A stretch of DNA of 64,000 bases from Octopus bimaculoides (taxonomy: Eukaryota). The stretch covers positions 37,844,355-37,908,354 of the forward strand of contig NC_068981.1 in assembly GCF_001194135.2 (NCBI RefSeq). Reading direction: 5' to 3'. The notes beneath the pieces are model-generated. The model ran no database searches and was not told where the DNA came from. It saw only the letters and a list, made by a program, of their open reading frames with translations. Shown here one piece after another: positions 43,342 through 43,851 of the stretch (the first letter of the stretch is position 1; each line of letters starts with the position of its first letter). Position numbers and translations under genes: made by a program.

Positions 43342-43412
43342 GTAGTCATTGTCATCAACATCTTGATCGTTTTAAAATATGGAAGGGGACTATTTGAAAA
43401 CAGAATGACCCC

Positions 43413-43851
43413 TGAAGTAGTTGTATGCTGTCAACTTAATGTGACAGTCCTCTGAAGGGAATAATACTACTGTTGGTTAGACCTAGGAAGCTGCACCGCT
43501 TCCTATCGGCCTTGACACATTTCCTGTGTCCTTATGTTTACAAGGGGGAGACAAGCACCTCCACCCAGCTACTCCAGACTGATGACGAGCAAAGACTCAG
43601 AAACATGTCTCTGGATGCAGGCTTAGCTGGGTGGAGGTGCTTGTCTCCCCCTTGTAAACATAAGGACACAGGAAATGTGTCAAGGCCGACAGGAAGCGGT
43701 GCAGCTTCCTAGGTCTAACCAACAGTAGTATTATTCCCTTCAGGGGACTGTCACATTAAGTTGACAGCATACAACTACTTCATCGTATCACTACTGCATA
43801 AATCTCTCTGAGAGATTTAGAAATGTATTATTTCTAAAAAGAATGACCCCT
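43413..43851. mobile_element. Young foldback insertion (159-bp arms, 2 mismatches) with 12-bp TSD; probably Penelope-like pLTR derived
   Basis: Arms 43413-43571 and 43624-43782; agaatgacccct duplicated at 43402-43413 and 43840-43851. Confidence 0.85.
43573..43615 (+). ncRNA. Minimal type I hammerhead-ribozyme motif in the foldback loop
   Basis: UCCAGA CUGAUGA C GAG CAAAGA CUC A GAAAC AU GUC UCUGGA: perfect 6-bp stem I, intact core, palindromic stem III ACAUGU, GUC cleavage triplet. Confidence 0.7.

What the first reader, a model, noticed from the sequence alone, without database searches (positions are those of the whole stretch)
43402..43851. Near-perfect 370-bp foldback insertion whose loop is a hammerhead ribozyme
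Seen: 159-bp inverted arms with only 2 mismatches (43413-43571 / 43624-43782), so the insertion is recent, and a 12-bp flanking duplication (agaatgacccct). The 52-nt loop reads UCCAGA-CUGAUGA-C-GAG CAAAGA CUC-A-GAAAC-AU-GUC-UCUGGA: complete CUGANGA/GAAA/GUC core, perfect 6-bp stem I and a palindromic stem III (ACAUGU). Established: Penelope-like elements carry minimal type I hammerheads with very short palindromic stem III that are thought to act as dimers, and they often leave inverted pLTR-derived ends. Inference: this is a non-coding, mobile hairpin-plus-ribozyme unit (PLE-derived or retrozyme-like). Its transcript would be a long dsRNA stem topped by a self-cleaving loop. I do not recall this compact architecture being described in cephalopods.
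Basis: partly seen in the sequence, partly recalled or inferred. Interest (0 to 1): 0.88.

Follow-up and report, generated by a model that had tools for sequence, protein, structure and literature searches.

The report
Truncated hammerhead retroelement inserted as foldback
A young 426-bp insertion made of two head-to-head copies of the end of a hammerhead-ribozyme-bearing retroelement; this foldback layout is what Penelope-like retrotransposon machinery is already known to leave behind, so the locus is real but fairly ordinary.

Summary
Arms 43413-43571 and 43624-43782 are 159 nt with 2 mismatches, both transitions. The spacer is 52 nt, and a perfect 12-bp duplication (AGAATGACCCCT) brackets the whole unit. 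The spacer carries a complete type I hammerhead core: 6-bp helix I, a short helix II, and a palindromic helix III (ACAUGU) that can only form in a dimer. Such a motif is expected about 0.003-0.005 times per window by chance. A second motif of the same odd variant lies at 39134-39178. Rfam detects neither.

A 57-nt tail (43783-43839) sits between the right arm and the right duplication. An inverted 5'-truncated copy abutting a longer direct copy, a one-sided tail, a short TSD and a microsatellite-flanked target together match the published anatomy of Penelope-like element (PLE) insertions.

The hairpin is therefore most likely a by-product of one integration event. The ribozyme is "the loop" only because the direct copy runs 52 nt further than the inverted one. 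Nothing shows a dedicated hairpin-plus-ribozyme family.

I could not search the source genome, so copy number, the parent element and the host (claimed to be a cephalopod) are untested. Verdict: a new member of a known kind, of modest interest.

The parts
43402..43413 (.). Left copy of the 12-bp target-site duplication AGAATGACCCCT. The inferred top-strand nick lies after ...CCCCT.
   Evidence: (family D5).
43414..43571 (-). Inverted, 5'-truncated copy of the element (left arm). Its 3' end (RT start site 1) abuts the left TSD. Its 5' truncation point corresponds to position 43624 of the direct copy.
   Evidence: It differs from the right arm by 2 transitions in 159 nt.
43572..43623 (+). 52-nt spacer: the extra 5' sequence of the longer direct copy. 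It becomes the hairpin loop.
43573..43615 (+). Type I hammerhead-like motif. Helix I: 43573-78 / 43610-15 (6 bp). Core: CUGAUGA 43579-85. C10.1 at 43586 is unpaired with A11.1 at 43599. Helix II: GAG/CUC 43587-89 / 43596-98, with loop CAAAGA. GAAA: 43600-03. Palindromic helix III: ACAUGU 43603-08. C17 at 43609, with predicted cleavage between 43609 and 43610.
   Evidence: non-random. (monomer helix III sterically impossible). (similarity to the Schistosoma Sm1-derived N79). (no Rfam match).
43624..43782 (+). Right arm: the part of the direct copy that is duplicated in inverted form. It contains a 6-bp stem-loop (43748-43769) just upstream of RT start site 1.
43783..43839 (+). One-sided 57-nt 'tail' of the direct copy, ending ...TTTCTAAAA at RT start site 2. 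It contains two small hairpins (43801-43835).
   Evidence: (I12).
43840..43851 (.). Right copy of the 12-bp target-site duplication. The inferred bottom-strand nick lies after ...CATTCT.
43288..43341 (.). (ATC)18 microsatellite, 60 bp left of the target site (context).
43866..43919 (.). (AGT)18 microsatellite, 14 bp right of the target site (context). The empty target was an 86-bp island between the two microsatellites.

Best explanation
This is a dead-on-arrival product of a single target-primed reverse-transcription event carried out by PLE-type machinery. The template was a hammerhead-bearing RNA: either the pLTR end of a PLE or a retrozyme-like non-autonomous derivative. Shown: staggered nicks 12 bp apart gave the TSD. 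Shown: the unit consists of a direct copy (43572-43839) and a shorter inverted copy (43414-43571) joined head to head. Inferred: each nicked DNA strand primed cDNA synthesis on the RNA at one of two alternative internal start sites. The bottom strand started at 43839 and the top strand at the position equivalent to 43782, which leaves the 57 nt between the sites as a tail on one side only. Inferred: both cDNAs stopped within about 40 nt of the ribozyme and were joined by a template jump or end joining, without microhomology, at 43571/43572. Because the direct copy ran 52 nt further, the ribozyme ended up as the hairpin loop. The hammerhead is a relic of the parent element. It cannot fold alone because helix III would be 2 bp with a 2-nt loop. 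It could act only by pairing its ACAUGU palindrome with a second copy in trans, and no second copy exists at this locus. Here the element most likely does nothing. If transcribed by read-through it would form a 159-bp dsRNA hairpin.
For: The anatomy matches published PLE insertions point by point. Craig et al. 2021 describe high 5' truncation, an inverted 5'-truncated copy immediately adjacent that forms inverted repeats, a 30-40 bp tail often at one end only, and microsatellite insertion bias (PMC8557442). Rotifer Pen2a has a direct pLTR plus an adjacent inverted pLTR 37 bp shorter, a 31-bp tail on one of them and 8-10 bp TSDs; head-to-head is the commonest arrangement, and pLTR-only inserts with TSDs exist (PMC3846280). 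For anole Poseidon, the protein nicks and extends both strands, RT starts internally at two sites not homologous to the target, the tail is the sequence between them, the HHR lies about 90 nt upstream of the RT start, and HHR cleavage is not needed for insertion (PMC11167929). At this locus I find a 159-nt inverted copy, a direct copy 52 nt longer, a 57-nt one-sided tail and a 12-bp TSD. There is 0-1 nt of primer-template homology at either start, and stem-loops lie just 5' of both starts. The target is an 86-bp island between (ATC)18 and (AGT)18. The inverted copy stops exactly at the arm/tail boundary; independent priming predicts this, whereas simple snap-back does not. The hammerhead motif is non-random. 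PLE pLTRs are reported always to contain HHRs (PMC6765202), and retrozymes are proposed to be PLE-mobilised pLTR derivatives (bioRxiv 10.64898/2026.07.22.740005). PLEs are abundant in cephalopod genomes (PMC8967140, PMC13282606). Two transition differences between the arms argue for a real, slightly aged locus.
Against: No PLE reverse transcriptase or GIY-YIG remnant was seen in the window: I found none among the ORF translations, which I inspected by eye and did not domain-scan. No homology of the arms to any PLE could be tested, because the source genome is in none of the searchable collections. The tail is 57 nt, longer than the reported 30-40. The HHR lies 173 nt (arm end) to 230 nt (tail end) from the 3' end, compared with about 90 nt in Poseidon_Ac. 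No reading frame stays open from the HHR through the arm, unlike PLEs whose pLTR includes the ORF start. The hammerhead is of the canonical retrozyme/Schistosoma type rather than the PLE minimal type. The only other hammerhead in the window lies in the 3' region of a non-PLE (restriction-like-endonuclease) LINE.
Confidence: 0.6

Rival explanations
1. The hairpin-plus-ribozyme is itself the transmissible unit of a non-autonomous family. Arm-loop-arm-tail would be copied as a whole, and the long stem would extend helix I of the ribozyme.
For: The whole 426-nt unit is bracketed by one TSD. The RNA would fold into a rod with the HHR at one tip and small hairpins at the other, loosely like rod-shaped retrozyme or viroid RNAs. 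Helix I plus an internal loop plus a distal helix resembles the canonical type I layout.
Against: A 99% perfect 159-bp stem is far beyond any known ribozyme-bearing rod, and it would block reverse transcription and attract Dicer or ADAR. The asymmetry (one-sided tail, inverted copy ending exactly at the tail boundary) is what PLE integration produces de novo. There is no second copy in 64 kb. The second hammerhead in the window has no such arms.
Confidence: 0.12
2. A 5'-truncated 3' end of a LINE- or SINE-type element (not PLE-mobilised), inserted by ordinary TPRT. The inverted copy would come from cDNA snap-back or a twin-priming-like event.
For: The 3' end is A-rich (…CTAAAA) and the 12-bp TSD is LINE/SINE-like. 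The window is full of LINE and SINE debris and has no PLE ORF. The second hammerhead lies 79-85 nt after the ORF of an R2-superfamily-type LINE (RVT_1, sometimes zf-RVT, then a C-terminal domain; no APE, no GIY-YIG). Schistosoma SINE-like elements carry a similar hammerhead (PMC6765202).
Against: Seven relatives of that LINE have no hammerhead or CTGANGA box in their 3' UTRs, and they end in (ACAT)n, which this element lacks. No tRNA-like head is present. From general knowledge, not tested here: twin priming gives inversion without a 159-bp duplication. A one-sided tail between two alternative start sites is reported as unique to PLEs (PMC11167929).
Confidence: 0.15
3. The inverted arm is not part of the insertion. 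It would be either an assembly artefact of a gap-rich short-read draft or a later DNA-level fold-back duplication.
For: The window has 13 N-gaps. PLE-type inverted structures are known to trouble short-read assemblies (PMC8557442).
Against: The left arm abuts the left TSD copy exactly, so it was present when the TSD was made. The two arms differ by two transitions rather than being identical, as a chimeric artefact would be. The spacer is unique sequence, not an adapter.
Confidence: 0.05
4. The hammerhead resemblance is a chance motif in the spacer of an unrelated foldback or MITE-like DNA element.
For: No Rfam hammerhead hit. The G10.1-C11.1 pair is missing. The 64-nt tip is no more stable than shuffles (z = 0.07).
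Against: The chance expectation is 0.003-0.005 per window, and a second motif of the same variant is present. Alignment to the Schistosoma-derived hammerhead scores 30 against a null of 16.9 +/- 3.2. Rfam also misses the cleaner second motif. There is no TSD directly flanking the inverted repeat, as a MITE would have.
Confidence: 0.03

Closest known systems
Penelope-like element insertions with an inverted pLTR and a one-sided tail (e.g. Adineta vaga Pen2a; Poseidon_Ac of Anolis)
   Same: Head-to-head inverted copy shorter than the direct copy, a tail at the 3' end of only one of them, a short TSD, a hammerhead upstream of the RT start site, RT starts not homologous to the target, and a microsatellite/AT-rich target.
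   Different: No ORF at all is retained (extreme 5' truncation to 268 nt). The tail is 57 nt rather than about 31-40. The HHR is 173-230 nt rather than about 90 nt from the 3' end. No ORF start is visible after the HHR. Homology to a PLE is untested.
Metazoan non-LTR retrozymes / canonical type I hammerheads (Schistosoma Sm1/Sm-alpha, newt and axolotl satellite HHRs)
   Same: 6-bp helix I, 4-position helix II with a 6-nt loop (CAAAGA vs CAAAUA in Sm1), a 2-bp helix III with a tiny palindromic loop implying dimeric action, a non-coding unit a few hundred nt long, and a TSD longer than 4 bp. A mismatch at the base of helix II has a precedent in axolotl HHR_Amex2 (U.U), which cleaves best as a dimer (PMC7229834).
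   Different: Not tandem: there is a single hammerhead at the locus. That fails the working definition of an active retrozyme and precludes circRNA formation from this locus. 10.1/11.1 is C.A.
PLE 'minimal' hammerheads (Cervera & de la Pena 2014)
   Same: Palindromic helix III, an unpaired nucleotide after A9, and presumed action as dimers.
   Different: Minimal HHRs have a long helix II (6-8 bp), a short helix I (4-5 bp) and a conserved G10.1-C11.1 directly followed by G12. Here helix II is 3 bp, helix I is 6 bp, and an extra A precedes G12.
L1 5' inversions by twin priming
   Same: Use of both nicked strands as primers within one TPRT event, giving an inverted 5' segment inside one TSD pair.
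   Different: Twin priming inverts a different, upstream segment and gives little or no duplication. Here the inverted segment duplicates 159 nt of the direct copy, and the two copies start at different 3' sites. This comparison rests on general knowledge and was not tested here.

Membership tests
Hammerhead ribozyme, type I | Conserved core C3-U-G-A-N-G-A9 ... G12-A-A14 ... A15.1/U16.1 and H17 | tested here: met
   CUGAUGA 43579-85, GAAA 43600-03, U43608, C43609.
Hammerhead ribozyme, type I | Three helices around the core, with the open end through helix I | tested here: met
   Helix I is 6 bp and helix II is 3 bp plus a 6-nt loop. Helix III (ACAUGU) can form only between two copies.
Hammerhead ribozyme, type I | G10.1-C11.1 closing pair of helix II | tested here: not met
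   C43586 and A43599 are unpaired. The second motif has A.A at the same place. There is a natural precedent for a mismatch here in an axolotl retrozyme HHR (PMC7229834).
Hammerhead ribozyme, type I | Match to a curated covariance model (Rfam RF00163 and relatives) | tested here: not met
   No hit at gathering score or at E<=10. The control motif at 39134-39178 is also missed, so the test has low power for this variant.
Hammerhead ribozyme, type I | Covariation in the helices across homologues | not testable with these tools
   No homologous copy could be retrieved; the source genome is absent from all searchable collections.
Hammerhead ribozyme, type I | Mg2+-dependent self-cleavage 3' of H17 | not testable with these tools
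   Needs in vitro transcription of monomer and dimer constructs.
Penelope-like element insertion | Inverted 5'-truncated copy adjacent to the direct copy (head-to-head) | tested here: met
   43414-43571 is inverted against 43624-43782, and the direct copy is 52 nt longer. Definition from PMC8557442 and PMC3846280.
Penelope-like element insertion | Short 3' extension ('tail') on one end only | tested here: met
   A 57-nt tail (43783-43839) on the right side only. It is longer than the 30-40 bp reported.
Penelope-like element insertion | Short TSD flanking the whole composite | tested here: met
   12-bp AGAATGACCCCT; 8-10 bp in rotifer PLEs.
Penelope-like element insertion | Hammerhead motif in the pLTR | tested here: met
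   Motif at 43573-43615.
Penelope-like element insertion | Sequence homology to an element encoding a telomerase-like RT plus GIY-YIG endonuclease | not testable with these tools
   No PLE ORF was seen in the window (judged by eye, not domain-scanned), and there is no access to the source genome or to Repbase/Dfam.
Non-LTR retrozyme | Tandem repeats with a type I hammerhead in each unit | tested here: not met
   TRF finds only the flanking microsatellites, and there is one hammerhead at the locus.
Non-LTR retrozyme | Canonical type I hammerhead (helix I 6 bp, helix II 4 bp, tiny palindromic helix III) | tested here: met
   Architecture. Alignment to Sm1-derived N79 scores 30 against a null of 16.9 +/- 3.2. 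Definition from PMC4209133.
MITE / foldback DNA transposon | TSD directly flanking both terminal inverted repeats | tested here: not met
   The flanks next to the inverted repeat (…CCCC[T] / [A]TCGTA…) do not match, and the TSD lies 57 nt beyond the right arm.

The most novel reading that the evidence does not exclude
The locus could be a direct footprint of PLE-type integration (two-strand priming, alternative start sites, tail) acting on an RNA that carries a canonical retrozyme-type hammerhead, not the PLE minimal type. That would be physical evidence at a single insertion that retrozyme RNAs are mobilised by PLE machinery. The host lineage would also carry a previously undescribed hammerhead variant with an unpaired N.A at the base of helix II, seen twice in this window. 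A bolder version is that the arm-loop-arm hairpin is itself inherited as a family.
Probability: 0.15. Interest if true: 0.6.

Novelty: new member of a known kind. Interest (0 to 1): 0.3.

Why it matters
If the reading is right, the locus is a clean, young, fully resolved example of what PLE-type integration leaves behind when only about 270 nt are copied: both priming sites, both nick sites, the junction and the tail can be read to the base. That is useful as a worked example for repeat annotators, who often misread such foldbacks as hairpin genes, MITEs or assembly errors. It also bears on the current proposal that hammerhead retrozymes ride on PLE machinery. It does not reveal a new kind of ribozyme element. 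The hammerhead is probably inert at this locus.

Tried and rejected
1. Rfam at three scales gave no hammerhead. The Metazoa_SRP and mir-763 hits are below threshold, occur on both strands, and only reflect the long hairpin. A control showed Rfam also misses the second motif.
2. I tried protein searches as a proxy for a genome search. Exact look-up of the arm-loop-arm ORF and of the neighbouring 162-aa ORF found nothing on record. A homology search with the 79-aa ORF found nothing. The collections evidently lack this genome, since the best hit to the LINE ORF is only 61% identical, so these negatives say nothing about copy number.
3. DNA pattern scans with CTGATGACGAG-N6-CTCAGAAAC found nothing in the viral collection. 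One hit each in the metagenome and genome collections is the same Ignavibacteria coding sequence, with no helix I and no GUC, so it is a chance match.
4. A covariance model from the two motifs was abandoned because MAFFT misaligned helix III.
5. Similarity between the arm and the sequence downstream of the second hammerhead is not significant (score 22 against 17 +/- 2).
6. Homology of the left flank to the arm end plus tail is not significant when gapped (P about 0.1).
7. The idea that the second hammerhead is a conserved LINE 3' UTR feature was rejected: 7 relatives lack it.
8. The conserved LINE 3' motif could not be found in the window copy, so the nested-insertion test was inconclusive.
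9. A tRNA-derived SINE was excluded. A MITE was excluded because no TSD abuts the inverted repeat.
10. The supplements of the two key papers and the Lunse et al. 2017 paper are not held.

Full report
OBSERVATION. The sequence is as described. Arms 43413-43571 and 43624-43782 are 159 nt and 99% complementary, with a 52-nt spacer. No other inverted repeat in the window approaches this; the next best are 70-89% SINE or microsatellite pairs. The two mismatches are both transitions, at 43451 and 43505. AGAATGACCCCT occurs at 43402-13 and 43840-51, and the left copy abuts the left arm exactly. The element has no other copy in the 64 kb. The whole unit folds into a 159-bp stem (-339 kcal/mol, z = -34.5). 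The window is a gap-rich (13 N runs), roughly 34% GC, microsatellite-rich eukaryotic draft.

THE HAMMERHEAD. The spacer reads UCCAGA / CUGAUGA / C / GAG-CAAAGA-CUC / A / GAAA / C-AU-G / U / C | UCUGGA (43573-43615). I wrote an explicit descriptor: CUGANGA, 0-1 nt, helix II of at least 3 bp, 0-1 nt, GAAA, U16.1, H17, and helix I of at least 4 bp. Simulated windows with the same dinucleotide statistics gave 0.16 relaxed hits on average. Motifs as good as this one came to 0.003 per window. Only 5 of 1000 simulated windows had any hit with a fully palindromic helix III, whereas the real window has two.

The second motif, at 39134-39178, reads CUGACGA-A-GGGU.AAGU.ACCC-A-GAAAC-CCGGG-UC. It has a perfect 8-nt palindromic helix III and the same peculiarity: one unpaired nucleotide on each side of helix II. 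The motif is therefore hammerhead-derived and not chance.

Its architecture is a 6-bp helix I, a 4-position helix II and a 2-bp helix III with a 2-nt palindromic loop. That is what Cervera & de la Pena call the canonical metazoan type I hammerhead (PMC4209133). It is not their PLE 'minimal' type, which has a long helix II and a short helix I. It aligns with the Schistosoma Sm1-derived N79 ribozyme (sequence from PMC12550524) through helix I, the core, part of loop 2 (CAAAGA vs CAAATA) and GAAAC. The score is 30 against a null of 16.9 +/- 3.2, and one of 500 shuffles exceeded it.

There are three caveats:
- The normally conserved G10.1-C11.1 pair is replaced by unpaired C.A.
- The tip is no more stable than shuffled sequence (z = 0.07).
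- No Rfam hammerhead model matches. Rfam also misses the cleaner second motif, so this test has little power here.

A mismatch at the base of helix II has a natural precedent in an axolotl retrozyme hammerhead, which cleaves poorly as a monomer and well as a dimer (PMC7229834). As a monomer, helix III here is sterically impossible because its loop is only 2 nt. Activity would need two copies pairing through ACAUGU, and the locus has only one.

The unit is asymmetric. Between the right arm (ending at 43782) and the right TSD copy (starting at 43840) lie 57 nt that have no counterpart on the left. The insertion is therefore TSD / inverted copy (158 nt) / 52 nt / direct copy (159 nt) / tail (57 nt) / TSD. 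Equivalently, it is a direct copy of 268 nt (43572-43839) preceded by a shorter inverted copy that lacks both the first 52 nt and the last 57 nt.

WHAT IT IS. This is the published anatomy of Penelope-like element insertions.
- Craig et al. [quoted passage not shown]
- Arkhipova et al. [quoted passage not shown] Head-to-head is the most frequent arrangement, and pLTR-only composites bounded by TSDs exist.
- Frangieh et al. 2024 (PMC11167929) supply the mechanism for an anole PLE. The protein nicks and extends both DNA strands. Reverse transcription starts internally at two nearby sites that are not homologous to the target, and the tail is the stretch between them. The hammerhead lies about 90 nt upstream of the start site, and ribozyme cleavage is not needed for insertion.

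Reading this locus in that frame, the bottom strand was nicked after …CATTCT and primed cDNA from …UUUCUAAAA (43839). The top strand was nicked 12 bp away after …CCCCT and primed cDNA from …CAACUACUUC (the equivalent of 43781/82). There is at most 1 nt of primer-template homology at either site. Small stem-loops lie just 5' of both starts. The target was an 86-bp island between (ATC)18 and (AGT)18.

The two cDNAs ended at 43572 and at the equivalent of 43624, and were joined without microhomology. Neither end coincides with the predicted cleavage site 43609/10, so nothing suggests the ribozyme shaped this insertion. The inverted copy stops exactly at the arm/tail boundary. Independent priming at the alternative start site predicts that stop, whereas simple snap-back of the first cDNA would need a coincidental one. 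The ribozyme is thus the loop only because one copy ran 52 nt further than the other.

PARENT ELEMENT. This remains open. There is no open frame from the hammerhead through the arm, and I saw no PLE protein remnant among the window's ORFs (inspected by eye, not domain-scanned). The canonical-type hammerhead points to a retrozyme-like non-autonomous RNA. Retrozymes are now argued to derive from PLE pLTRs and to use PLE enzymes (bioRxiv 10.64898/2026.07.22.740005). However, the locus is not tandem, so it is not itself a retrozyme by the working definition.

PLEs are documented as abundant in cephalopods. I could not verify that the window is cephalopod. The retrievable relatives of its LINE ORF are unnamed environmental or assembly contigs.

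AGE. The arms differ at 2 of 159 positions. If the host is an octopus, and using the calibration quoted in PMC13282606 (Jukes-Cantor 0.09 is about 25 My), that is of the order of 1-2 My with a wide Poisson error. This is an inference.

RIVALS.
- An inherited hairpin family cannot be excluded without the genome, but it is disfavoured by the asymmetry and by the implausibility of propagating a 99% perfect 159-bp stem.
- A non-PLE LINE/SINE origin deserves some weight. The second hammerhead lies 79-85 nt past the ORF end of an R2-superfamily-type LINE whose relatives have RVT_1, sometimes zf-RVT, and this C-terminal domain, with no APE or GIY-YIG. Against this, seven relatives of that LINE have no hammerhead and end in (ACAT)n, which the main element lacks.
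- An assembly artefact is unlikely, given the TSD abutting the inverted arm and the two arm differences.
- A MITE is excluded because no TSD abuts the inverted repeat.

LIMITS. The decisive test, a search of the source genome for copies, could not be run. Protein-proxy and DNA-pattern searches of the available collections found nothing relevant.

VERDICT. The architecture is most likely a one-off by-product of PLE-type integration rather than a new compact mobile design. It is a new member of a known kind, of modest interest.

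Noticed in passing
window 39134-39178 (+): A second type I hammerhead-like motif: CATACG/CTGACGA/A/GGGT-AAGT-ACCC/A/GAAA/CCCGGG/T/C|TGTGCG. It has a perfect 8-nt palindromic helix III and the same unpaired nucleotide on both sides of helix II as the main motif. 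Helix I is weak (4 pairs, 2 of them G.U). Rfam does not detect it. Two such motifs in one window are far above chance (5 of 1000 simulated windows have even one).
   Followed up: partly
window 38487-39460 (+): A 5'-truncated non-LTR retrotransposon fragment. It consists of a 162-aa ORF plus a frameshifted continuation to about 39055, then a 3' UTR ending in (CATA)n at 39438-39459. Long relatives have RVT_1, sometimes zf-RVT, and this domain at the C-terminus, with no APE or GIY-YIG, which is the R2-superfamily (possibly Dong/R4-like) architecture. Pfam has no model for the C-terminal domain, although 1301 representatives match it. The second hammerhead lies inside this 3' UTR, yet 7 relatives from other sources have none. 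A hammerhead native to a LINE 3' UTR would be unusual.
   Followed up: partly
window 39041-39367: The segment 39053-39314, which contains the second hammerhead, is bracketed by ATTACACTT(T/A)TT (39041-52 and 39315-26). Its last 47 nt (39268-39314) are an inverted copy (45/47) of the adjacent flank 39321-39367. This could be a nested hammerhead-bearing insertion in which the target primer snapped back on itself before switching to the RNA. That would make it a second insertion-associated foldback in the same window. Unresolved.
   Followed up: partly
window 43377-43401 vs 43815-43839: The 25 nt left of the left TSD copy match the last 25 nt of the tail at 16/25 ungapped; only 6 of 8469 window 25-mers match that well. 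This is too diverged to be part of a young TSD. It may mean the target resembled the element's own tail end (homing or endonuclease recognition), or it may be chance.
   Followed up: partly
L004, L005, L008, L009, L010 (3' UTRs of LINE relatives): Relatives of the LINE share a conserved 3' UTR motif, ACCTTGCTATA..GTTTATAGCCGG, about 120-160 nt after the stop. It is followed in some by (ACAT)n tails and is likely the RT recognition hairpin of that clade. It is not detectable in the window copy.
   Followed up: no
window 75-392 (-), 3868-4083 (-), 11149-11382 (+), 23900-24187 (-): ORF fragments with LINE-like signatures by eye (…FVDLEKA…, …GRGRPRKTW…, zinc-knuckle-like C..C…H). I also saw repeated SINE-like units (e.g. 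32632-32806, 34803-34977, 35643-35734). None of these was domain-scanned.
   Followed up: no
window 63354-63411 (+): A third hit of the relaxed hammerhead descriptor. It has a 3-bp helix II with a long loop and no helix III pairing, so I judged it a chance match.
   Followed up: yes
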